64,000 nucleotides of DNA, taken from contig NC_068992.1 of assembly GCF_001194135.2 (NCBI RefSeq), forward strand, positions 4,364,066 to 4,428,065, given 5' to 3'. Below the pieces are notes generated by a model that was given only the letters and a program-made list of their open reading frames with translations, was not told the DNA's origin and made no database searches. The position numbers and the translations under genes were made by a program. Shown one piece after another: positions 806-63,765 of this stretch. The stretch is from Octopus bimaculoides. Taxonomy: Eukaryota. The first letter of the stretch is position 1. Each line of letters begins with the position of its first letter.

Positions 806-1030
806 GGTGGAAAGCTATCGCAGTGGTTAGTTTTTTTTATTTGGTTGATGCCAAAATGCTTATCTGTGTTTCTTCCGGCTTTATGTTGAGTTCAAACTCC
901 ACCGTGGTCGATTTTGCCTTTCATCCTTTCGAAGACGATAACAGGAGTATCATCCAAGCAATGCGGTTGATGTCGTCAACTTGCCTTCTCCCACCTTCTC
1001 CCGTGTGGTTCTAATAGAGAGAATAATTAC
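806..1030 (+). mobile_element. tRNA-derived SINE, family A, diverged copy
   Basis: B-box-like gagttcaaactcc followed by the family-A central motif gcctttcatcctttcg, shared with more than 15 other loci in the window. Confidence 0.7.
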
Positions 1031-9470: not shown

Positions 9471-9886
9471 ATGCTGATGATAATAATGATCATGGTGGCG
9501 GTGACGGCGATGGTGATTGCAATATTGTTTGAATCATGAGGCTGCCAAGGAATACAACGTGCGATGGAGGATGATGCTGACGATGATATTGAAGGTGATG
9601 ACGATGATGATGGTGATGATGGTGATGATGATGATGATGACGAGGAGGNNNNNNNNNNNNNNNNNGGAGGAGGAGGAGGAGGGTGATTGATGAAACTGAT
9701 GACAATGACGTTGATGACAATGACGACGACGACAATGAAGAAGAAGAAGGAGAAGAAGAAGAAGAAGAAGAAGAAGAAGAAGGAGAAGAAGAAGAAGAAG
9801 AAGATGACGAAGACAAAGAAGAAGATGACGAAGAAGAAGAAGAAGAAGAAAAAGAAGAAGAAGATGACGAAGATGACGAAGAAGAA

Positions 9887-9917
<31 letters not shown>

Positions 9918-10280
9918 AAGAAGAAGAAGAAGAAGAAGAAGACGAAGAAGAAGAAGAAGAAGAAGAAGAAGAAGAAGAAGAAGAAGGAGAAGAAGAAGAT
10001 GAAGAAGAAGAAGAAGAAGAAGAAGAAAAAGAAGAAGAAAAAGAAGAAGAAGAAGAAGAAGAAGAAGAAGAAGAAGAAGATCATGGAGTTAACAAGGCTC
10101 AGTAATAGGGTGGATAATGCTACTGCTGCTGACGATGCTGCTGATGATGGAAATGATAAAGACGAGTATGATGATGATGATGATGCAGGTGATGGTGGTG
10201 CTGGCGGTGGTGGTGATGATGATGATGATGATGATTATGAAGACGACGACGATGATGACACAGATGAAACACGACGATGA
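9340..10280. repeat. Compound trinucleotide microsatellite (GAC/GAT/GAG/GAA)n with a long GAA tract
   Basis: Direct reading; source of the poly-K, poly-E, poly-F and poly-D spurious ORFs. Confidence 0.95.
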
Positions 10281-12463: not shown

Positions 12464-13790
12464 TAAACATTCAAACACATACATACCCCACTCACACGCA
12501 CATAATTGGTGTTAAATGATTAACAATGAGTTGAGATCCAGAACATGCATTTAGTAACATATCTAAATACATTTTACATGGAATTTTCGGAAGGGACAAT
12601 TTTATAAAACGAGTAAGTGTTGTCAAGTAGCCGACTATCCCTGCTTAACAACTAACATGAAAACAGCGCCATACCTGCCGGAGTAACAATTGTAAAGCCT
12701 TTGAGCCAAGAGCGCTTTCATCAGTTTACTGCTATGGTTTAGTGATTTAGATTATCGGTCCTGGGAGAAAATTTGATCCCCGTCGGATTTGGGTGACAAA
12801 CGTGACATCTTGCTCATTATTCTAATGGTCCTGCCAATTGCTCTTCTTGATTCACCTACATTCACACATTATAACTGGATCTGAGTTGTATATCAATTTG
12901 TGGAGACGTTTTTGAGATTTTATCTCATCTAAGCCAGTCTATTAATGGAGGCTTTCCAACGATATCTATTTCAACTAGCTTTTGTGCATAGATTATTAAG
13001 GAATGCACAATGCAAGATATTTGCGTAATTTTAAACGCAACAGAATGTCATATGAAAGAATATTGTGTACTATTCCTAACAAATTCGATAACCCCTTAGA
13101 TGTTCTTCCCGCATTAGTGGAAAAGACATTTGTAATTATATATATATTTTCACATATATAAAACCTTCTAGAACATGGAATAAACCGCATTTTTCAAATG
13201 AATAAACAAATATGCAAATAAGTGTAATTTCTTTTTTGAGGCGAGATTGAATGCATAAATTTGTTATTACATACAAAAATATTGTTCCACACATGTAACG
13301 GACAGCAAATCGAATTTATTCTCTTTATAATATGATTTTTAAGGAAAAATTTTGCGGAGGGCTTAAAAGAAACATTTCACTTAAAGATTCGACTGCACGT
13401 GATGATAATTTTGCAAAAGTTGAATTTATTGTGTACATATTCATTTCTTTTAATTTATAACTTTGTCATTTTCCAATCACAGCAAAATGTATCAGGCTCT
13501 TGACAGATTCTATGCAATCTTGTCGGTAGATGGCGCTGCTGGTAGAGTTGGTGGGTCTACTTAATATAATTATGACGTACTTAGTCGGTGAGTGGATTAC
13601 GAAAATTTAAATACTTAGTGACTTGTTAGAAGTGATGTAAGGAGAAAGTGGAGAAGAAAAAGCGAAGAATTATTACCAGAACCGCAGCTTCCACCATCAT
13701 CACCTGCATATCACCAGCGGTTTCCTCATCGGCACACCACAAGCAGCTGCACTACCAAGTGCACATCACCACCACCACCAGCAGCATTAC

Positions 13791-13855
<65 letters not shown>

Positions 13856-13873
13856 TAATAATAATAATAATAA

Positions 13874-14018
13874 GCACTATTAGGCAGCGCGCACATCCTA
13901 CATAAATCTCTTTCAATACAGTAACCATAAGAGCATCATAGCAAATCACAGCACATACCCAAGGCACACAGAGCTGTGCTCGGTAGTGCAGTGAAAGCAT
14001 GTGGTAAAAATATGACAA

Positions 14019-14022
<4 letters not shown>
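13874..14022 (+). mobile_element. R4/Dong-clade non-LTR retrotransposon, extreme 3' fragment inside (TAA)n
   Basis: Translates ALLGSAHILHKSLSIQ* (C-terminus typical of the restriction-like endonuclease ORF end), then about 100-nt 3' UTR; (AAT)n at 13788-13873 and 14022-14086. Confidence 0.75.
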
Positions 14023-14086
<64 letters not shown>

Positions 14087-15129
14087 GTTTTTGAAGCAGC
14101 AACCAAATTTCTTACGGATCTCAGTATACGGTCTTAACTTAGGAAAGAACACATTGGACCTTCTACAAAATGGTTAGTTCGTCGTTGATGCAATGGATTT
14201 TACCAAAGGTCTGCTAGGGCAGGTTTGATCTAGAACGAAATATAAACATCATCAACAAAAGTAATAGTTGCAGCAAACAACAACAACAACAAAAACAACA
14301 GCAGTAGCAGCAGCAGCAGAAGCCACTGTAGTTGCAGCAAGAAGACAACGGCAGCAAACAGCAAAAAAAAAACAAAAAAAAACAGAACAACACAAGTAGA
14401 AATTAGCAAAAGAAACCAGTAATCCAGAGAAATTCCCCCCCCCCCAACTTTCTCACCAACCTTCTACACCCTTCNNNNNNNNNNCCCCCCCCCCCAACTT
14501 TCTCACCAACCTTCTACACCCTTCCAGAACCTTTCTGCCCCGCCTAAGTCTAACAACTACAACCACTACAAACATAAACACACAAGTAGTATGTTGCAAA
14601 TAAAGTAACTGCGGAATACTCTAATCCCTTCCTCCTTTCTTCAAAACAACCACCAAGCTTCCTCCTCCTCTTCCGCCTCCTGCTCCTCCTCCGCTTCCTC
14701 TTCCTGCTCCTCCTCCTGCATAGTAGCCATCACCGTCACCATCCCCGACGCATATATCTAATTGCATTTTCTTTTTAGTTAACAAACGAAGAGGAAGCCA
14801 AAGAAACAGCAATTTCGAATAGAATCTTGATGGAAATTTCTCTAAAATAATGACATTGCTTCTTAATTGGATCTATTCATACATATTCATGTTTTAAACT
14901 GTTTAAACACTCTATAGATTTATAGCTCTTATTTTATTATTAGCATCGTGACGTCGTATCGTCGACGCCGAACTAATTTGTTATGGCGGCGGATATGCAT
15001 GCTGTTTGCATTTGTTGTTGCTTGTTGTTGTCAACGTTGTTTGTTGTTTTTCTCCCATTTTTGGTCATTGCTGTTGTTGTTCTTGTTCCCATTGCTCTGC
15101 TTGATGTTTCATCTGTTCAATTTTCACTT

Positions 15130-17068: not shown

Positions 17069-17508
17069 TGTATGTATGTATATAGATGTGTGTTTGTGTG
17101 TACGATACGTGTGTGTACATATATAATTGTGTATGATTAGATGTATATATATATGGATGTGTGTGTATGTATGTATCTATCTATATACATACATACATAC
17201 ATACATGCATACGCATGCACATATATATTCTGTCTTGCTCTCACCTTTTCTCTTTCTTTGTCTCTCACCATTCCCCGCCTCTATATTTATCTCATATATT
17301 TCTTCTTCTTCTTCTTCTTCTTCTTCACCACTTGTTCCTCCTCCTCCTCGTCCTCCTTCCCCTCCTCCTTCCCTTCTTCTCTTCCTCCACCTTCTTTCTT
17401 CTTCTTCTTCTTCTTCTCCTCCTCCTCCCCCTCCTCCTTCTTCATCTTGTTGTTGTTGTTGTTGTTGTTCTTCTTTTTCTTCTTCTTCTTCTTCTTCTTC
17501 TTCTTCTT

Positions 17509-17539
<31 letters not shown>

Positions 17540-18350
17540 TTCTTCATCATCATCATCATCTTCTTCTTCTTCTTCTTCTTCTTCTTCTTCTTCTTTTTCT
17601 TCTTCTTTTTCTTCTTCTTCTTCTTCTTTTTCTTCTTCTTCTTCTTCTTCTTCTTCTTCTTCTTCTTCTTCTTCTTCACTCTCTCTCCCTCCTTCTTCCT
17701 CTCCCTCTCCCTCTCTCTTTCAGTGTCTCATTATCTCTCTTCTCTCTATTCATTATATACACCTATCTCTTCTCTCACATATCGTCTTCTTTCTCTCTTA
17801 CTTTTCCTCACATCACGTCTCATCATCTATCTTATACACACACACACACACACTCTCTCTCTCTCAATCTCTGAGTCTCTCTCTCTCTTACTCTTTGCCT
17901 TTCCTTTACTCTTATACTATGTTACAATCTTATCTATCCACCAGAATTATTTCTATTCTCACATACATCCTCTCTACATACGTCTCTCTCGCTCTTTCTC
18001 TCTCTCTCCCAGTCTCTCAACACCTCTCTCTATCTAACACAGATATTATATATTTCTTTACTCCTACCACTATATCTCGCTCCTTCTCTCTCTCTCTCTC
18101 TCTCCCTCTTCCTCTGTATTTCCTTCTTGCTACCTCTACATCTCTTTCTCTCTCTATGTTCTCACTATATTTTCTCATCATATGCTTTCTCCTCTCTCCT
18201 ATCTCCACCTCTCATATGCCCCCTTCATATAAGCTACATTTTAGTCACACACAGTTTCTACTCACTCTCATATACATCCTTTCAGTAACTCGCTCTACTC
18301 TACCCTTGCCCTATCAACCACCCTTGCCATTACTTATCCTCAAATATAAA
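15130..18350. repeat. Pyrimidine-rich low-complexity block, degenerate (CT)n, (TCAC)n and (TTC)n
   Basis: Direct reading; (TTC)n core at about 17300-17680. Confidence 0.9.
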
Positions 18351-18510: not shown

Positions 18511-18710
18511 TATTGATTTCAAATTTTGGAAAAGTCCAGCACTTTCGCGGATGGGATAATGTCAATTACCTCGACTTCAGTGTTCGACTATTACTTACTT
18601 TATCGACCACGAAAGACAATGTCGCTCTCAGCAGAATTTGAACTCGGAACATAAAGATGGGCAAAATACCGCTAAGTCCTGTGTGCTAACGATTCTGTCA
18701 CTACTCAGCC
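18511..18710 (-). mobile_element. SINE family A
   Basis: tatcgaccacgaaag...gaatttgaactcggaac...gtgctaacgattctgtca. Confidence 0.75.
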
Positions 18711-19610: not shown

Positions 19611-19746
19611 ATACTTATTTTATCGTCTCCAAAACTATGAAAAACCAAGTCGGCCTTAGCGGTATTTGGACTTATAACGTAAATCCGGAAGAAATACCAC
19701 TAAGCATTTTGTCCGTGGTGCAGTAATAATTCTGCCAGCTCACCGA
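19611..19746 (-). mobile_element. SINE family A, 5' half, tail-to-tail with family B copy
   Basis: tacttattttatcgtctcc...ggtatttggactta...attctgccagctcaccg. Confidence 0.7.
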
Positions 19747-27810: not shown

Positions 27811-28852
27811 ACAGCTAATAAAATCCACGCGAATAGCATTTTATTATTCTGTGACCCAAAGCAATATTATCCTCCTTTGGAGTGATTCTATTCCTTGTTG
27901 TACCTTTTAATATTTTACTGACCCGCAGCATTGTTATATTTTTGACTGACCCAGCAAATGAAATGGGAGTTCCAAACTAACTAGTTTACTTCTTTTAATA
28001 AATAATCTTAATGACCTCGGTGGGATGGGATTTAAATGAGAACGGGAATCTCTCAACAGAGAGCGATAAACACGGTGAGTCACACCAACTCTATACATAA
28101 TGTGCATTTAAGAACGTATGTACGTATATATCTATGTATATATGAATGTCCCCCTCCTCTCTCTTTGTCTCTGTTTCTGTCTCTCTCTCTCTCTTCACAC
28201 ACACACAGAGGCATAAGTACGCTACTAAAATATATTCACTAATCCTCAGTTTAGTGCTAAACAGCTTTTATACATAAATCAACATAAAGAGAAACATTGA
28301 TATACATACATACATACAAACACATAGACACACATAAACACACACACATGTATATGCATTGGAGAAACTTTGAGTATAATCAGCCGAAATTGCGAAGATA
28401 ATATGGTACTCGACTGAGGAAAGAAAACTTCGAATAACCCGTCCGTGTTTTCTTTGTATGATTTATCTGGATGTTTTGTTGTCCTATTTTTGTATCACCT
28501 AACTGTCCGGATATTTTGCGTTCTTGTTCCATTTTGTATTATATATATATATATATATATATNNNNNNNNNNNNNNNNNNNNNNNNNNNNNNNNNNNNNN
28601 NNNNNNNNNNNNNNNNNNNNNNNNNNNNNNNNNNNNNNNNNNNNNNNNNNNNNNNNNNNNNNNNNNNNNNNNNNNNNNNNNNNNNNNNNNNNNNNNNNNN
28701 NNNNNNNNNNNNNNNNNNNNNNNNNNNNNNNNNNNNNNNNNNNNNNNNNNNNNNNNNNNNNNNNNNNNNNNNNNNNNNNNNNNNNNNNNNNNNNNNNNNN
28801 NNNNNNNNNNNNNNNNNNNNNNNNNNNNNNNNNNNNNNNNNNNNNNNNNNNN

Positions 28853-28896
<44 letters not shown>

Positions 28897-28970
28897 CATA
28901 CACAATACATATATACTCAAACAGACACACTCTCTCACACACACACATATACATATAGATATACATACAC

Positions 28971-29003
<33 letters not shown>

Positions 29004-29410
29004 GACACATACACGCACACACATATCAGTATGTCTATAAAACATGAGCGGTAGCGTAAGTTATGTGTTTACACATGTTATGTATTTGTTTAGTAGTTAT
29101 AATATAGTCAGCCAACAGCAGTCTACTGTAGTGTCTAGCTATCAAACATGAATGCTACGAAGATATCATAAGTATTGACATAGTAGATATTGCAACGTGT
29201 TTGAATATGTCTAAAATTTGCTATGTAGATGTTGGAAATATTATATATAACAGGGGTAGAAAAGAACATAATAATCCATAAAATATATCTAGCGGTGTCT
29301 GTCTGTATAGTGATGCAGCGAGATTAAGAGATTTTGAAACTTTCAATGGTGATTAAAGTCAGAATTTATTCCTCTCAGTGTCTGTTTGCGTATGGATGAT
29401 TGTGTGTGTG

Positions 29411-29453
<43 letters not shown>

Positions 29454-30264
29454 ATGTGTTGAAGCGTGTATGTGTGTGTGTGAGAATATATGAGCATTTC
29501 TGTGTAAGCGTGCATGAGTGTGATAGCGCGAGTGTGGGGTTTAGATGGTTGTGCGATAATATATTGACATTTTAAACAATATTGAAATAATCTCGCCGCA
29601 AGACTAGGAAAGATTTTCAGATTAAAACTCTGTAACCCCCCCCCCCCACACACACGCACAGGCACAACCTCACAGAGCACTTATATACTTGTGGTTTGAA
29701 ATGTAAAGAGCAAAAGTCCTCACAACATGACATAGAGTATAGAGTATAACTATATTAATTCGGCTGCCATGGACTTCTGATCTGGCTTCCACGTCGTTCG
29801 GGAAACAACCCAATTGATTCTATTGAAAAGTTCGTTTGTCTATGCTAGCGTTCGGAGTTCCCTATTTCACTAGATAAACTACATCATTCTCTCATAAGAT
29901 GCACTCCAGTGCACACGTAGTTGCAGTTGTACGTATATTAAAGACGGGTACCGAAGAAGACCAGACATTTCAAAAGCAGCCCCATTTGTTTAGATCCGGG
30001 AATATTTGCAGGGAGGTATACCGTTGGATATATATCTTTGGTCCTTGATAGTCTAATAGGAAAACAATTTTGCGATAAAACGATGTATTAAAAAAACGAA
30101 AAAAAAAAAAACGAAGGGCATATTACGGTTATGACAGCTAAGTTTAGCAGTGTGTGACACAGAAACTATTCGTATGCGACCTAATCAGTATCTTGAATGA
30201 AAGAGCTTAAATCTTAAAACTATGCTTCTTTGCTAAGTATTTAATAACAATAATGATGATGATG

Positions 30265-30330
<66 letters not shown>

Positions 30331-30332
<2 letters not shown>

Positions 30333-30484
30333 TGCACTACTGGGTACTGCACACATTCTACGCAAAACACTTTCAATACAGTAAACATAAGAGCACCACA
30401 GCAAACCACAGCACATACCCAAGGCGCACAGAGCTGCGCTCGGTAGTGAAGTGAAAGCACGTTATAAAAATAAAACTACTGAAC
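30331..30484 (+). mobile_element. R4/Dong-clade 3' fragment inside (TAA)n, paralog of 13874-14022
   Basis: Translates IALLGTAHILRKTLSIQ* (stop 30382-30384), same 3' UTR; (AAT)n on both sides. Confidence 0.8.
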
Positions 30485-30577
<93 letters not shown>

Positions 30578-30597
30578 CCTTTCTGCTATAGATACAA

Positions 30598-30930
30598 CGG
30601 AAAAAAATTGAGATATTCCCGCCACTTCTGGACGAGATAGGAAAGTTATGAGGCATGAGGAAAGTAAAGGTGATACCGGTGGCATTTGGAGCATTAGGTG
30701 CAGTTTCCAAGGGCCTTGAAAAACATATTAAGAATATTGGAAGCGCTGTCAGGCTCGACGTGATCCAGAAGACAGCATTGTTGGGTGCAACTCGCATTCT
30801 AAGGAGAGTATTGTCTCTTTGAGTCACAGGAGAAGGCATTACTTGAAACCTTTGGTGTTTTGCTATTGTCTGCTTTCAAGTAAAGAACAACCAGTAATTA
30901 AAAACTGTCCGAGTGTCTTTCAGAATAACA
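30598..30930 (+). mobile_element. Second R4/Dong-clade family, 5'-truncated, endonuclease C-terminus plus 3' UTR
   Basis: 30601-30822 translates KKIEIFPPLLDEIGKL*GMRKVKVIPVAFGALGAVSKGLEKHIKNIGSAVRLDVIQKTALLGATRILRRVLSL*. Confidence 0.85.
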
Positions 30931-30940
30931 ACAATAATAA

Positions 30941-31115
30941 TCCATTCTCTTATAGGTACAATGCCTGAACTTTTCTGGGAGCCGGTTAGTCGGAGAGGTG
31001 GGGATAGTAACTGATACTTATTTAATCGACCCCGAAAGGATGAAAGGCAAAGTTGACCTCGGCGGAATTTGAACTCAGAACACGAAGACAGACGAAATGC
31101 CGCTTAGCATTTCGT
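30941..31115 (-). mobile_element. SINE family A, left copy of tandem pair
   Basis: atcgaccccgaaaggatgaaaggcaaagttgacctcggcggaatttgaactcagaac, close to the family consensus. Confidence 0.9.
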
Positions 31116-31297
31116 AAGGCCTGAAATCTGAGGGACAGGGGCTATTGATTACATCGACCCTGAACTGATGATTATTTTATCGACCCTAAGGATGAATAAG
31201 TAAATCTGCCTCGTAAGAATTTGAACTCGGAACGTAAAGACGGATGGGAAACCTCTAAGCATGTTGTCCGGGATGCTTACGACTCTGTCAGCTCGCC
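31116..31297 (-). mobile_element. SINE family A, right copy of tandem pair
   Basis: aaggcctgaaat...ttttatcgaccc...gaatttgaactcggaacgtaaagacgg...ctgtcagctcgcc. Confidence 0.85.
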
Positions 31298-31618
31298 ACT
31301 AATTTCCATTCCCAATAATTAATACAATTGTTCTTGCGTATTGTTAGTTTATTCATTAATTACTTTTGCTAATTTTTCATACAAGAATTTCATGAAGCTT
31401 CTCTTACAAAGGTCTCACATGATAGGATTCAACCAATGAATTCACGAAGCCGTAACACCATTTTGGAAAGTAGAACATTTCATTACATTACAGCAAGCTG
31501 CTGTCTGAAGCATGAGTATACACGTAAAAGCTAAGTAACGCCATAGAGCTACATACCTTTGAGGATATAATCCTGCTTCACTCCATAGCAATTCAATGAA
31601 GAAGCAGTATATATCCTC

Positions 31619-31674
<56 letters not shown>

Positions 31675-32422
31675 CGGACACACGCATACACGTGTAGCAA
31701 GCTAGTTAGCTAGATGGAAAGACAGATAGAAAGAAAGATAGATAGATATACATATGCCGGTGAATATATATCATTACACAGCAACAGCAACACACGGACA
31801 TATGTTTGTTTTTATATAAGAAAATATTTTGCGTTATATTTTCTATTTACTTATTTTCTACGCTTTAACCATAGACTTGTGAATCAGATGACAAGGTTGC
31901 TTCAGTGTTTGTATGTATGCATACATACATAATGCATATAAAACCATCCATCTGTTCACACACACACAACACGGTCACATACACACGTCGGTAGATACAT
32001 AGATAATTCTGTGTGAATTATATTGGCAATGAATATACTACTAGAAAAATATGAACATATATAAAAGAATAATAGAATATATGTTTAAAATAAACATTAT
32101 CATATATAAAAGATCAAGAAGAAAACATTTAAAATAAAAGCGATAAGGAAAGTAAAGTAAATAAGACTCGGAATCTAAGCTCTTAGATACGTGTCCGCGC
32201 ATCTTTTGTGCATATTTTGATAGGAACGTAAATTTATACAAGCAATGGTTGTCACGTTGAATTTAAATGTGAATCTACTTCATAGATCTACAACACATAA
32301 TGTTAATATGAAATATTTTCTTATTCTGATTCCGTGTATTCTCTAAGTTAGTTACGCATCTAATGGAATGCATATGGGGGAAGAAGATAAATAGAATGAA
32401 TAAATAACATATAGAATAAATG

Positions 32423-32491
<69 letters not shown>

Positions 32492-32960
32492 GATATACAT
32501 ATATAAACGAAATATAACTCATGAACCTTTCACTTATAGAAAGCGATACCAAATCATCTTAGACATATTCTTCTAAGCAGAATCTCTTCTGTTAAATGGT
32601 AAAATTTAAGCGTGTTGACAAGATTATGAAAACACCTTTCAGGAAATTCTTCGATTGAAGGGATTTGATTGTACAGAAATGTCAAAATGGATTAGATTAT
32701 GAAGCATTATGAAACGTTCCACACACACATACGGGCACATATGGATGCATATATACATGTATTGATGCATAAATGAATACATACTTATACACATACGTAC
32801 ATACATACATATGTCTGTATGTATGTTAATACTCACACAGACATACACACACTCAGGATTAGCCAGCAGCGACCAAATACACGCAAATTCATACACATGT
32901 TTATATGCATAATATATACATACACAAATGCTCTCTCAGCCCTTTCTCTCTCTCTCCCTC

Positions 32961-32991
<31 letters not shown>

Positions 32992-33809
32992 NNNNNNNNN
33001 NNNNNNNNNNNNNNNNNNNNNNNNNNNNNNNNNNNNNNNNNNNNNNNNNNNNNNNNNNNNNNNNNNNNNNNNNNNNNNNNNNNNNNNNNNNNNNNNNNNN
33101 NNNNNNNNNNNNNNNNNNNNNNNNNNNNNNNNNNNNNNNNNNNNNNNNNNNNNNNNNNNNNNNNNNNNNNNNNNNNNNNNNNNNNNNNNNNNNNNNNNNN
33201 NNNNNNNNNNNNNNNNNNNNNNNNNNNNNNNNNNNNNNNNNNNNNNNNNNNNNNNNNNNNNNNNNNNNNNNNNNNNNNNNNNNNNNNNNNNNNNNNNNNN
33301 NNNNNNNNNNNNNNNNNNNNNNNNNNNNNNNNNNNNNNNNNNNNNNNNNNNNNNNNNNNNNNNNNNNNNNNNNNNNNNNNNNNNNNNNNNNNNNNNNNNN
33401 NNNNNNNNNNNNNNNNNNNNNNNNNNNNNNNNNNNNNNNNNNNNNNNNNNNNNNNNNNNNNNNNNNNNNNNNNNNNNNNNNNNNNNNNNNNNNNNNNNNN
33501 NNNNNNNNNNNNNNNNNNNNNNNNNNNNNNNNNNNNNNNNNNNNNNNNNNNNNNNNNNNNNNNNNNNNNNNNNNNNNNNNNNNNNNNNNNNNNNNNNNNN
33601 NNNNNNNNNNNNNNNNNNNNNNNNNNNNNNNNNNNNNNNNNNNNNNNNNNNNNNNNNNNNNNNNNNNNNNNNNNNNNNNNNNNNNNNNNNNNNNNNNNNN
33701 NNNNNNNNNNNNNNNNNNNNNNNNNNNNNNNNNNNNNNNNNNNNNNNNNNNNNNNNNNNNNNNNNNNNNNNNNNNNNNNNNNNNNNNNNNNNNNNNNNNN
33801 NNNNNNNNN

Positions 33810-34396: not shown

Positions 34397-35000
34397 AACG
34401 CAGAGGAATCGTTAGCCCTCCGAACAAAATGCTTAACGGCATTTCCTCCGCCTTTACGCTCGGCGTTGAAATTCCGTCGTGGTTAGCCTCTCATCCCTCC
34501 GTGATCGATAAAATAAATACCAGTCATGCACTGGGGTTGATATAAGTGCCTGTCATCTATCCCAAAGTTTCAGACCTAGTTCCTATTGTAGAAAGTTTTA
34601 CTAAATAGATGAGAAAAAGAAAAAAAAGCGAGTTGGCCGAATTGTTAGCATGCTGGAGAAAACACATATCGGCATTCCTTTGATCTCTGTGTTCTGAGCT
34701 CAAATTCTAGCGACGTCGATAAAATAAGCACCAACCTCTCATTGTCAATGAAATCGACTAGTTAGCTTACCAAACGTATCAGGCCTTGTATCTATCATAG
34801 AAAAGATTATTACATAAAAGTCGGAAAAATTCGTACTTGCATGTCTTATGGCTATGTACTTTCCGAGTTCAAATTTTGCATGGAGTCAAATGTGCCTTTC
34901 ATCGTCAATAAATTAACGTAGTAAACAAGTACTAATGCAGAAACTATTGACCAACGCCCTCCCTTTCGATAACAGACCTTGTGCCTATATTGGAAAATTC
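34397..35000 (+). mobile_element. Three consecutive co-oriented SINE family A copies (about 34397-34600, 34627-34812, 34820-35000)
   Basis: Each has a gaatcgttagc-like head or a gagttcaaatt B-box, gataaaat central motif and ccttgtgcctat-like tail; increasingly decayed. Confidence 0.7.
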
Positions 35001-47177: not shown

Positions 47178-47632
47178 AATTGTTTTCAAATTTTGGCACA
47201 AGGCCAGCAATTTCGAAGAAAAGGGTAAATCGATTTGATCGACCCCAAGTACCCAACTGGTATTTCATTTATCGACACCAGAAGGTTAAAAACAAAGCCG
47301 ACCTCAGCGGAATTTCATTTCCGAATGTGAAAACGGACGAAATGCCGGTAAGCATTTTACTCGGTATGCTAATAATTATTCTGCCAGCTCGTGTCCTAAA
47401 TTTAATCATAATTAATGCTTTCAAATGTTGACACAAGGGCAAGAATCTCTGGGGACGGGCTAAGTCGATGAAATCGACCCCAGTGCTCAACTGGCACTTA
47501 ATTTATCGACCCCCGAAAGGTTAAAAGGCAAAGTCGACTTCACCGGTATTTGATCTCAGAACGTGAAGACGGACGAAATACCGCTAAGCATGTTATCCGG
47601 GGGCTAATAATCATTCTACCTGCCCGACGCCT
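47178..47632 (-). mobile_element. Two co-oriented SINE family A copies (47178-47395, 47410-47632)
   Basis: Both have ttttatcgac...aaaggcaaag...gacct...gaattt...gacggacgaaat...ctaagcat. Confidence 0.88.
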
Positions 47633-51803: not shown

Positions 51804-52859
51804 ATATTATATCTTGTGCGCACAGTGACATGTACGAGTGCGACTCTTGAGTTCAGACCTCCTTGTCCATTATCATACACTTTGCTTCTAATATAACGCT
51901 GCTTAGTTTTGTACTACTATTCTCAATAGTTTTACTGGTTATGATATACAGAGCGAATGCAAAAGAATTCGTGATAAACACAAGTTTTGTACCATTTGTT
52001 CCCTACGTAATTATCGCCGTTGTGGCTGTTTATAATTAGAGCATTGAATGTTCAGAGTGTTGTTGGATGCTTAACGACAACGGTTCATCACGGTCAGTCT
52101 TTATTGTATTGCTATCAGTTCTTAAATCCAATTGTCTGGGCCGCGAAAATAATGAAAAGAAAACATCGTGTGGACGGAGAATGTCGGAATGAATATCTCG
52201 GAGAGGATTCCACGACAATTAAGGACAAATGTGAGATGTTAAGACGTGATGAATATTATGTGAAATATCTGAAAATATCTAAAGGCACGGATGTATTTTC
52301 ACATTCATTCAAACAAATTCCTAGAAGAAAATACATATTCATCTAGATATTTTACAAGAGGTAATCGTTTGAAACATATCTATAGATACATCTTATTCTC
52401 ACACACATGAATGCGAATATCCAGAAATTTCTAGAGTTAGATAAGTGAAACTTGTGTTTTGTTAACAGCTGTTTTCTAGTTGTGGAAACAAGTCAGATTT
52501 AAAGAAAACACCATAAATACGCCGGGAAATGTCTAGACTTTAGCTTGTCACTATTGTTAATGGCTATTTCCTAGACTGTTAGGAAGAATATATCATACAT
52601 ATTGACATATATAAATACAGACAAATATAAATATTCTGTCTAATATTTGGTAAATATGGCAGAGACATTGACCATCACACAAAATATTTATTCCAGTCGA
52701 AATAGTACGCCGTATGACTATAATTATTTATATAAAGGCTGCTTGGTAATCAAGGTCGTTTTCTAATAAAGTCATTTCGAGTACCTCATACTGCGCCTCT
52801 CTAAAATGTCTTCTATTATAGCCTCACACGTCGACAAATGTCATGTGAGTGAACATGGT

Positions 52860-53229
52860 AGATGGTACTTATTTTATCGACCTCGAAAGGAAGAAAAGCA
52901 AAGCTGACCTCGGCGGAATTTAAAGTTGGAACGTAGCGATGGCCGAAATACCTCTAAGCATTTCGTCCAGTTAACGGTTCTGCCAGCTCACCGCCATTTG
53001 TACATGTTTCAATAATCTTTTCTACTGTAGGCACAAGGCCCGACATTTTGAGGGAGGCTCCCAGTCGATTAGATCGACCCTAGTACGCGACTGGTACTTA
53101 ATTTATCGACCCCGAAAGGATGAAAGGCAAAGTCGACCTCGTCGGAATTTGAACTCAGAACGTAAAGACAGACGAAATACCGCTAAGCATTTCGCTCGTC
53201 GAGCTAACGTTTCTGCCAGATTACCGCCT
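52860..53229 (-). mobile_element. Two co-oriented SINE family A copies (52860-52995, 53010-53229)
   Basis: Right copy is close to consensus: gtacttaatttatcgaccccgaaaggatgaaaggcaaagtcgacctcgtcggaatttgaactcagaacgtaaagacagacgaaataccgctaagc. Confidence 0.9.
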
Positions 53230-61364: not shown

Positions 61365-61618
61365 ACCTTGAAGGGAGATGATTCTCAAAGTTGACCTCGT
61401 GGGGATTTGAACTGACTAATATCGGTTTCCAAATTTGGTACAAGACCTAAAATTTCGAGGGAAGGATAAGTAGATTATATTGACCCTAGTATTTAACTGG
61501 TATTTTATCGACTCTGAAAGGATGAATGGTAAAGTCTATCTCGTCAGCATTTGAACCCAGAACTTAAAGACGTTCACCATTTTGTCGTTGTGCTGACGTC
61601 TCTGCCAGCTCGCTGCCT
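61365..61618 (-). mobile_element. SINE family A, partial copy (61365-61410) plus full copy (61420-61618)
   Basis: aaagttgacctcgtggggatttgaact, then ttccaaatttggtacaagacc...ttttatcgactctgaaaggatgaa...ctgccagctcgctgcc. Confidence 0.75.
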
Positions 61619-61794
61619 CAAACTGACTATTATTAGATTTCAATGAGATCCCGGTTCTTCCTTCTTGCTCCAGCTGGCCTTATTGTCACAATCACTATGA
61701 ATTCTTATTCTTGTTGCTATTGTTGTTGTCAATGCCGCTTACGTTCAAGATAAGGATAAGCCTTACAATGCCAACACATGCAAATCATTGATTC

Positions 61795-61822
61795 TTCTTC
61801 TTCTTCTTCTTCTTCGTCTTCT

Positions 61823-61869
<47 letters not shown>

Positions 61870-62177
61870 TTCTTCTTCTTTTTCTTCTTCTTCTTCTTCT
61901 TTTTTTTCTTCTTCTTCTTCTTCTTCTTCTTCTTCTTCTTCTTCTTCTTCTTCTAATTTGCTACATTCATCTACTCCATCATCATCACCATCATCATCAA
62001 TGACATCATCGCCTTCTCCTTCTATTTCGCTTTATTCACCTACTCCATCATCATTATCATCATCGTTGATATAATGTTCTTCTTCTTCTTCTTCTTCTTC
62101 TTCTTCTTCTTCTTCTTCTTCTTCTTCTTCTTCTTCTTCTTCTTCTTCTTCTTCTTCTAATTCGCCTCATTGACCTA

Positions 62178-63130: not shown

Positions 63131-63345
63131 AGCGGCGTGTGCTGGTAGAATCTTTTTCACGCCGGATAAGACGACGCCTATCGGTATTTCGTCCGTCTCT
63201 ACGTTCTGAGTTCGAATTCCTTCAGAGTCGACTTTGCTTTCATCCTTTCCGAGTCGATAAAATAAATACCAGCTGAATACTGAGGTCACTGCAATCGACT
63301 TACCCCTCAATTGATATTGCTGGCCTTGTACTAAAATTTGAAATA
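63131..63345 (+). mobile_element. SINE family A followed by (AAT)n at 63343-63407
   Basis: cgttctgagttcgaattcc...gactttgctttcatcctttccgagtcgataaaataaataccag...ggccttgtactaaaatttgaa. Confidence 0.88.
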
Positions 63346-63357
63346 ATAATGATGATG

Positions 63358-63408
<51 letters not shown>

Positions 63409-63765
63409 GCCCTAGGTGTACGGAAAAAAGTCGGTGAGAAATGGAAGAAAATTTGAAGAAAGAAGAAAGAAAACAACAATAATAATAATTATTATTATTA
63501 GATTCGTTGCCGAGTAGTAGTACTTTGGAACACGTTACGGTTGTTTGTATGGGTTATAATTTTTGCTTTCACTCCCCCGTTATCGTTTTATGTGCTAATT
63601 TTTTGCTAAGGTCTATTAATAAGAACGTCAGGTGTACTATGGTTGGTTTTTGCCCTCGTAAGCGGCAATATTTTCCACGTTCAGTTAGGTTCTTTTTAAA
63701 ATAGTAAATACATATACAAGATAGAGTCATTAAGTGCTATCATGGGAGCATCAAATGGGAGTACC

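What the first reader, a model, noticed from the sequence alone, without database searches (positions are those of the whole stretch)
13788..14086. Two about 150-bp Dong-like 3' ends truncated at the same codon, each embedded in (TAA)n
Seen: 13874-14022 and 30331-30484 start at the same position (A of IALLG) and end at the same position (ctgaa), with (AAT)n on both sides. In the 17 shared codons, 11 nucleotides differ: four codons differ synonymously (L, G, A, I) and three conservatively (S/T, H/R, S/T). Established: Dong elements of the R4 clade insert specifically into TAA repeats using a restriction-like endonuclease. Inference: the copies come from two diverged, once-coding master lineages yet stop at one point. 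This suggests either an ATA/ATT microhomology truncation hot spot or a Dong-derived SINE-like mini-element. Insertion would also split and seed TAA arrays.
Basis: partly seen in the sequence, partly recalled or inferred. Interest (0 to 1): 0.7.

Follow-up and report, generated by a model that had tools for sequence, protein, structure and literature searches.

The report
Truncated Dong LINE tails in TAA repeats
Two 148-bp pieces of an octopus "Dong/R4" jumping gene (last 16 codons plus 3' untranslated tail) sit inside TAA microsatellites; they are ordinary dead-on-arrival copies, and with only two copies their shared 5' end cannot be told from coincidence.

Summary
Copy A (13874-14021) and copy B (30334-30481, plus two extra T at 30332-30333) are 84% identical over 149 bp without gaps, and each lies between long (AAT)n arrays.

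Each copy carries the last 16 codons, the stop codon and a 97-nt 3' UTR. The tail ALLG(S/T)AHIL(H/R)K(S/T)LSIQ* matches the conserved C-terminus of a very large family of invertebrate LINEs. That domain's best sequence and fold matches are the restriction-like endonuclease of R2 proteins. Relatives elsewhere also lie in TAA arrays, so "Dong-like" is supported.

The 11 coding differences are 8 synonymous and 3 replacement (pS 0.60, pN 0.09; P about 0.01 under neutrality). A UTR hairpin also keeps a compensatory pair. The copies therefore come from two separate coding lineages. Flanks are unrelated, and there is no pol III head.

A self-propagating mini-element is disfavoured. A truncation hot spot is possible but untested. 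Relatives truncate at many different points, and I estimate coincidence at roughly 1-3%. No further octopus DNA was reachable.

Dong-R4 LINEs are already catalogued in octopus genomes. Interest is low.

The parts
13791..13873 (.). (AAT)27.7 array on the 5' side of copy A
   Evidence: TRF, 97% matches; sequence
13874..14021 (+). Copy A, 148 nt. It holds 16 codons ALLGSAHILHKSLSIQ (13874-13921), the stop TAA (13922-13924) and a 97-nt 3' UTR (13925-14021).
   Evidence: tblastn match to the tail of a relative's endonuclease domain
13956..13985 (+). 3' UTR hairpin in copy A: UACC-CAA-GGCACA-cagagc-UGUGCU-C-GGUA
   Evidence: Consensus fold with one compensatory pair against copy B. The UTR folds with z = -3.8. 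The inner 6-bp helix is 100% paired in four sequences of three families, and three of its pairs change on both sides.
14022..14086 (.). (AAT)21.7 array on the 3' side of copy A. It starts in AAT register immediately after CTG.
   Evidence: TRF, 100% matches
30242..30331 (.). (TAA)30 array on the 5' side of copy B, with GAT variants at its 5' edge
30332..30481 (+). Copy B, 150 nt. TT (30332-30333) is either the remnant of the Ile codon ATT or two untemplated bases. Then come 16 codons ALLGTAHILRKTLSIQ (30334-30381), the stop (30382-30384) and the 3' UTR (30385-30481). The hairpin lies at 30416-30445.
30482..30577 (.). AAC followed by an (AAT)31 array on the 3' side of copy B. This array is also the 5' flank of the third Dong-like fragment.
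30578..30599 (+). 22 nt that resemble the 5' head of the octopus SINE and recur at 30942-30963 (17 of 22 identical, each directly after AAT repeats). Probably the target-site duplication of the third fragment.
   Evidence: P about 2e-5 for this fixed register
30601..30941 (+). Third Dong-like 3' fragment, from a different subfamily. Its decayed coding tail reads ...KIEIFPPLLDEIGKL*GMRKVKVIPVAFGALGAVSKGLEKHIKNIGSAVRLDVIQKTALLGATRILRRVLSL*, with the stop at 30820-30822. The UTR runs to 30923, and the tail AAT AAC AAC AAT AAT AAT covers 30924-30941.
   Evidence: best hits are Octopus bimaculoides proteins; tblastn E 3e-14

Best explanation
Copies A and B are two independent, dead-on-arrival, 5'-truncated insertions of two different subfamilies of a Dong/R4-type LINE. 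This kind of LINE carries a restriction-like endonuclease (RLE) and targets TAA repeats. The host is an octopus genome.

Inferred mechanism, by analogy with R2:
- The element's protein nicks one strand inside a (TAA)n array.
- It recognises the conserved hairpin in the 3' UTR of its RNA and primes reverse transcription from the nick. Every 3' junction seen reads ...G|AAT, so the priming register or an element-borne (AAU)n tail is fixed.
- cDNA synthesis or the template ended about 148 nt in, 48 nt upstream of the stop codon.
- The 5' end was joined to the upstream TAA repeats with 0-2 nt of overlap or two untemplated T.

The units share no truncated ancestor. Their difference arose while the parent elements still coded. 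Whether the common end point reflects a preferred stop or joining site (about 0.4) or coincidence (about 0.45) cannot be decided from two copies.
For: SHOWN
- Homology and TAA flanks.
- The 16-codon tail matches the conserved C-terminus QK(I/T)ALLGT.(H/R)ILR(K/R).LS.. of more than 7,500 proteins. P0108, for example, ends QKIALLGTAHILRKVLSIQ.
- A profile of that domain hits R2 proteins best, aligning the PD...D...E.K..KY motif (9nl3_A E 0.007, 9dou_A E 0.011). A predicted model, of low confidence (pLDDT 60), matches R2Tg, R2Pm and R2Bm first (E 2e-4 to 1e-2).
- Relatives sit in TAA arrays. L012 holds a 299-bp copy and L013 a 213-bp copy, each between TAA arrays. The 436-bp copy in L001 has a TAA array on its 3' side only. 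L013 also holds a 2.1-kb RT + CCHC + RLE element between two TAA arrays.
- Coding signature: differences by codon position are 2/2/7, Sd 8 and Nd 3, pS 0.60 against pN 0.09 and 13% in the UTR. P(3 or fewer amino-acid changes given 11 random substitutions) is 0.007-0.010.
- The hairpin is conserved with compensatory changes.
- Flanks outside the arrays are unrelated.

LITERATURE
- Dong targets TAA repeats in silkworm, mosquito and a snail (PMC3812793).
- Dong belongs to the R4 lineage (PMC3774820).
- Dong-R4 LINEs are abundant in Octopus (PMC13282606, PMC9115989).
- 5' truncation with microhomology or untemplated bases is usual for R2 (PMC2718515).
Against: - The copies themselves hold no RT or endonuclease sequence. 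The family assignment rests on 16 codons, the TAA context and relatives from other phyla.
- No full-length octopus parent was retrieved, so the parent sequence at the break point is unknown.
- The codon test rests on 11 differences.
- Two independent events ending within 2 nt of each other would be a roughly 1-3% coincidence if there is no site preference.
- The structural model is of low confidence.
Confidence: 0.85

Rival explanations
1. SINE-like or non-autonomous mini-element: a ~148-nt unit arose once by truncation and has since been copied in trans by Dong reverse transcriptase. The shared 5' end would then be inherited.
For: Both units have the same length and ends. They keep the UTR hairpin that the reverse transcriptase presumably recognises. 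The former coding part is more diverged than the UTR (23% against 13%), as expected if only the UTR mattered.
Against: The divergence in the former coding part is codon-structured: 8 synonymous and 3 replacement differences, P about 0.01. A non-coding lineage would not show this. There is no tRNA-like gene and no correctly ordered A/B boxes, and no 5' ribozyme or Rfam match. A unit that always lands in promoterless TAA arrays has no evident way to be transcribed. Only two copies occur in 64 kb.
Confidence: 0.1
2. DNA-level duplication: one insertion was copied together with its TAA arrays by segmental duplication or by unequal exchange between TAA arrays.
For: TAA arrays can promote unequal exchange. 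A relative, protein P0084, shows three tandem copies of one Dong fragment separated by (AAT)5-6.
Against: There is no similarity in the 2.3 kb on either side of copy A against 28000-33000. The copies lie 16.4 kb apart. Their 16% divergence has a coding signature that post-duplication decay would not produce.
Confidence: 0.03

Closest known systems
Dong (Bombyx mori) and its relatives DongAg (Anopheles) and DongBg (Biomphalaria); R4 clade of non-LTR retrotransposons
   Same: Insertion into (TAA)n arrays. No poly(A) tail, with the 3' end abutting the repeat. The C-terminal domain of relatives is of the R2/R4 restriction-like endonuclease type (PMC3812793, PMC3774820).
   Different: The window holds only the last 148 nt. 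RT phylogeny, the zinc finger, the endonuclease and the 5' ribozyme cannot be checked on these copies. No direct comparison with the Bombyx Dong sequence was possible.
Dong-R4 LINE families annotated in Octopus vulgaris and O. bimaculoides
   Same: Same host group: the best protein hits to the neighbouring fragment are O. bimaculoides proteins. Same class. Five recently active families with 1,129 insertions are reported in O. vulgaris (PMC13282606), and a full-length Dong consensus in O. bimaculoides (PMC9115989).
   Different: I could not match copies A and B to a named library family, because the libraries are not available here.
5'-truncated R2 insertions in 28S rDNA
   Same: Dead-on-arrival copies produced by target-primed reverse transcription from an RLE-type LINE. 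The 5' junctions show a few bases of microhomology or untemplated bases (PMC2718515).
   Different: The target is a microsatellite rather than 28S rDNA. As a result, target-site changes and the exact junction are hidden inside the repeat.
SIDE elements (R2-derived non-autonomous elements; recalled from memory) and microsatellite-associated repeat families such as those made by RTE LINEs in Lepidoptera (cited in PMC9115989, reference 41)
   Same: A short LINE-derived unit next to microsatellites, which creates families of similar microsatellite flanks.
   Different: SIDEs keep a 5' ribozyme and arise by internal deletion. Here there is no 5' part, and the codon-type divergence argues against an independent non-autonomous lineage.

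Membership tests
Dong / R4-clade RLE-type LINE | Insertion specifically into (TAA)n repeats | tested here: met
   All three Dong-like fragments in the window abut AAT arrays, and copies A and B do so on both sides. The arrays cover only 0.62% of the window. Relatives behave the same way.
Dong / R4-clade RLE-type LINE | The ORF ends in a restriction-like (PD-(D/E)xK) endonuclease domain downstream of RT and a CCHC motif | tested here: inconclusive
   Copies A and B hold only the last 16 codons. These match the conserved tail of a domain whose profile hits the R2 endonuclease (E 0.007) and whose low-confidence model matches R2 structures first. Relative L013 shows RT, then CCHC, then RLE, then the tail, in one element. 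The feature is met for relatives and cannot be seen in the window copies themselves.
Dong / R4-clade RLE-type LINE | RT phylogeny groups the element with Bombyx Dong and Ascaris R4 | not testable with these tools
   The window contains no RT sequence, and reference Dong and R4 sequences could not be fetched.
Dong / R4-clade RLE-type LINE | HDV-like self-cleaving ribozyme at the 5' end of full-length copies (PMC3774820) | not testable with these tools
   The copies are 5'-truncated. The Rfam scan of 13700-14150 gave only spurious CrcZ hits on the AAT repeats.
Dong / R4-clade RLE-type LINE | No poly(A) tail; the 3' end is joined to the target repeat in a fixed register | tested here: met
   All 3' junctions read ...G|AAT. 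This holds for copy A at 14021|14022, copy B at 30481|30482, the third fragment at 30923|30924, and L001, L012 and L013.
SINE / LINE-dependent non-autonomous mini-element | Own promoter-bearing head (tRNA, 5S or 7SL type, with A and B boxes) | tested here: not met
   ARAGORN finds nothing. The only matches are loose box-like strings in the wrong order.
SINE / LINE-dependent non-autonomous mini-element | Copies diverge from a non-coding master, so substitutions ignore codon positions | tested here: not met
   pS 0.60 against pN 0.09; differences by codon position 2/2/7; P about 0.01 under random substitution.
SINE / LINE-dependent non-autonomous mini-element | Many copies of one discrete length | not testable with these tools
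   Only two copies occur in the window. Searches for more octopus copies failed.

The most novel reading that the evidence does not exclude
The break 48 nt upstream of the stop codon is a real stop point that does not depend on subfamily. Dong-R4 elements would then make a discrete class of ~148-nt insertions, for example from a 3' RNA fragment with a defined 5' end (protected by the bound protein or by terminating ribosomes) or from a strong reverse-transcriptase stop. This class would multiply inside TAA arrays, splitting and re-seeding them. The protection and RT-stop mechanisms are speculation with no direct evidence here.
Probability: 0.35. Interest if true: 0.4.

Novelty: already known. 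Interest (0 to 1): 0.2.

Why it matters
There are three modest consequences.

- Short Dong tails embedded in TAA arrays create families of near-identical microsatellite flanks. This complicates marker design and assembly in cephalopod genomes, and it helps explain clusters of TAA arrays.
- The conserved 3' UTR hairpin (GG-NNN-A ... U-N'N'N'-CU), seen with compensatory changes across octopus and other invertebrate families, is a candidate recognition element for a TAA-targeting reverse transcriptase. That could interest people developing R2-type site-specific insertion tools.
- If the common 5' end proved to be a real hot spot, it would give a handle on how LINEs of this type terminate or join their cDNA.

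Tried and rejected
- Protein search with the open reverse-strand frame across the unit, hoping to catch other genomic copies called as ORFs: no candidate.
- Exact-pattern scans with conserved 19-26-mers:
  - viral contigs: none;
  - JGI metagenomes: none with the first pattern, one hit with the second;
  - GTDB genomes: four hits.
  - All hits are bare 19-22-nt chance matches in bacterial DNA.
- tblastn of RT and endonuclease pieces of a relative against the window: no other Dong parts.
- Rfam: only sub-threshold CrcZ hits on the AAT repeats.
- Pfam on the endonuclease-tail family: nothing.
- Single-sequence PDB search with the L013 endonuclease region: not significant.
- The original Dong paper (PMC309301) is not held.
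- The fifth AAT array, at 63342-63408, was compared with the third fragment's UTR: no similarity.
- Motif and blast scans of 13 relatives' loci for extra short copies starting at the ALLG codon: none.
- Microhomology as the sole cause of the common break: rejected as insufficient. The overlap is 0-2 nt, and better TAA-like stretches, such as CAATACAGTAAACATAAG, lie inside the unit.

Full report
**1. What is in the sequence**

Copy A (13874-14021) and copy B (30334-30481) align without gaps. They share 125 of 149 positions (84%), with blastn E about 1e-42. No further copy exists in the window.

Each unit reads 16 sense codons, then TAA, then a 97-nt untranslated stretch ending in CTG. The coding tails are ALLGSAHILHKSLSIQ in A and ALLGTAHILRKTLSIQ in B.

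TRF finds only five (AAT)n arrays in the 64 kb, together 399 bp or 0.62% of the window. Four of them are the immediate flanks of these two units, with 22 to 31 repeats each.

Two refinements are needed. A starts with GCA right after ...TAATAA. B has TT in front of GCA, giving ATT = Ile. The 5' ends therefore agree to within 0-2 nt. The 3' boundary is best placed after CTG, because what follows is already in AAT register; in B the first repeat is AAC.

**2. A third fragment beside copy B**

Directly after the (AAT)31 array that follows copy B lies a longer, decayed fragment at 30601-30941. Its coding tail reads ...KIEIFPPLLDEIGKL*GMRKVKVIPVAFGALGAVSKGLEKHIKNIGSAVRLDVIQKTALLGATRILRRVLSL*. A UTR follows, and then the tail AAT AAC AAC AAT AAT AAT.

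It belongs to another subfamily and is truncated at a different point.

The 22 nt before it (30578-30599) recur at 30942-30963, with 17 of 22 identical, each time directly after AAT repeats. These 22 nt resemble the 5' head of the abundant octopus SINE that follows. The simplest reading is a target-site duplication: this fragment inserted at the junction between a TAA array and a SINE.

**3. What family this is**

A protein search used the third fragment's tail together with copy B's peptide. Its best hits were three Octopus bimaculoides proteins. One of them, P0001, starts MIIIII, which is a TAA array read in frame. The window is therefore most likely octopus DNA; this is an inference.

Longer relatives show the motifs (R/K)PD ... 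D ... E.K..KY ... GALG ... QK(I/T)ALLGT.(H/R)ILR(K/R).LS... Several end almost exactly like copy B. P0108 ends QKIALLGTAHILRKVLSIQ and P0041 ends ...AHILRKTLSITE.

A profile of 11 such sequences finds R2 retrotransposon proteins as its best matches among solved structures. The alignment runs over the PD...D...E.K..KY endonuclease motif near their C-termini (E 0.007 and 0.011). A predicted model has low confidence (pLDDT 60). Even so, it matches R2Tg, R2Pm and R2Bm structures first, followed by viral PD-(D/E)xK cap-snatching endonucleases. Pfam has no model for this region.

The family is very large, with more than 7,500 proteins at E < 1e-5. It includes corals, Penaeus and Styela.

**4. Genomic loci of relatives**

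Three fragments of one "…LSIK" family are 436, 299 and 213 bp long. Each is followed by (AAT)n, and two are also preceded by (TAA)n.

In locus L013, a 2.1-kb element with RT (RVT_1), a CCHC motif, RHN, an endonuclease and a C-terminal tail lies exactly between two TAA arrays. The 213-bp fragment and another TAA array follow it directly. This is the same clustered layout as copy B plus the third fragment in the window.

**5. Agreement with the literature**

- Dong targets TAA repeats in Bombyx, Anopheles and the snail Biomphalaria (PMC3812793).
- Dong is in the R4 lineage, and its full-length 5' end abuts TAA repeats (PMC3774820).
- Dong-R4 LINEs are catalogued and numerous in Octopus (PMC13282606; PMC9115989).

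**6. Do the two copies share a truncated ancestor?**

The 11 coding differences fall 2/2/7 on codon positions 1/2/3. There are 8 synonymous and 3 replacement changes (pS 0.60, pN 0.09). The UTR differs by 13%.

In simulations, 11 random substitutions gave three or fewer amino-acid changes in only 0.7-1.0% of trials. One of the three replacements, CGC to CAT, which removes the otherwise invariant Arg of ILR, looks like CpG decay after insertion (inference).

Most of the divergence therefore arose while the parents were still coding. That points to two master lineages and two separate truncation events.

Sequence outside the arrays is unrelated, which excludes a segmental duplication. There is no tRNA-like head and no properly ordered A/B boxes. 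Together these points argue against a self-propagating mini-element. The codon test does rest on few sites.

**7. A conserved RNA element**

The UTR contains a hairpin, UACC-CAA-GGCRCA-loop-UGYGCU-C-GGUA. It carries one compensatory A-U to G-C change between A and B. The UTR of copy A folds better than all 200 shuffles (z = -3.8).

The same architecture occurs in the "LSIK" family (AGCC-CUA-GGCCCA-AGGAA-UGGGCU-C-GGCU). The inner helix also occurs in a coral family (GGACUA-UAAAC-UAGUCU).

On a small, hand-trimmed alignment of four sequences, the inner 6-bp helix is paired in every sequence. Three of its pairs change on both sides. None of 500 shuffles reaches the observed covariation score, and versions of the structure slid by 1-3 columns collapse.

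I take this hairpin as the likely recognition element for the reverse transcriptase, by analogy with R2. That is inference.

**8. Hot spot or coincidence?**

The overlap between element and TAA repeat at the 5' junction is 0-1 nt in A. In B it is at most 2 nt, or else two untemplated T. This is the kind of junction described for truncated R2 copies (PMC2718515). It is too weak to single out this site, since better TAA-like stretches lie within the unit.

In the wider family, 5' ends abutting TAA arrays are varied. The DNA-level fragments are 213 bp, 299 bp and 2.1 kb long. At least ten different points are visible among proteins that begin with poly-Ile or poly-Asn. That sample cannot detect very short copies.

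No extra short copies were found in about 110 kb of relatives' loci.

My rough estimate assumes short copies end anywhere in the last ~450 bp. Two copies then coincide within 2 nt about 1% of the time, or about 3% for any pair among the three fragments here.

A site preference is thus plausible, at about 0.4, but unproven. I could not reach further octopus DNA with any tool.

**9. Verdict**

These are ordinary 5'-truncated Dong-R4 LINE tails in TAA microsatellites of an octopus genome. They come from two subfamilies.

The mini-element idea is disfavoured. The hot-spot idea needs the genome-wide histogram of 5' ends described under next steps.

Noticed in passing
window 30578-30599 and 30942-30963: A 22-nt stretch occurs twice (17 of 22 identical), each time directly after AAT repeats, bracketing the third Dong-like fragment. 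It resembles the 5' head of the octopus SINE. It is probably a target-site duplication made when that fragment inserted at a junction between a TAA array and a SINE.
   Followed up: partly
window 854-952(-), 2586-2694, 18592-18700, 19611-19712, 31009-31262 (two units), 34424-34524(-), 47255-47357, 47489-47601, 52855-52968, 53067-53194, 61501-61572, 63182-63272(-): There are many copies of a ~100-170-bp SINE-like repeat with the core ...ATCGACCCC(A/G)AAAGGATGAAAGGCAAAGT.GACCTCGGCGGAATTTGAACTCAGAAC.... Copies are 70-90% identical, and several are preceded by A/T-rich or AAT-like sequence.
   Followed up: partly
window 63342-63500: The fifth (AAT)22 array is followed by a 68-nt unique stretch and then AACAATAATAATAAT(TAT)n. 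It shows no similarity to either Dong-like UTR. It might be another tiny insertion in a TAA array or only array decay.
   Followed up: partly
whole window: Microsatellite density is extreme: 135 TRF rows. GAA/TTC arrays exceed 100 units at 9737-10080, 17300-17677 and 61792-62158. There are 3,118 N in many assembly gaps next to TA, AC and ATAC repeats.
   Followed up: no
protein P0084 (ENA contig, a relative; not in the window): One internal Dong fragment (RVYEKEGEKIEKYQ...RLDAWL) is repeated three times in tandem, with the copies separated by five or six Asn codons, i.e. (AAT)5-6. Units of [TAA array + Dong fragment] can therefore also be amplified at the DNA level.
   Followed up: no
L013 7924-10308: A relative's locus shows the chain TAA array, 2.1-kb RT + RLE element, TAA array, 213-bp fragment of another family, TAA array. 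This is the same clustered layout as copy B plus the third fragment in the window. It suggests that TAA arrays beside old insertions are re-used as targets.
   Followed up: partly
window 13956-13985 and 30416-30445; L001 6375-6403; L002 3' UTR: A 3' UTR hairpin with the pattern GG-NNN-A / U-N'N'N'-CU is conserved with compensatory changes across octopus and other invertebrate Dong-like families. Rfam has no match for it.
   Followed up: partly
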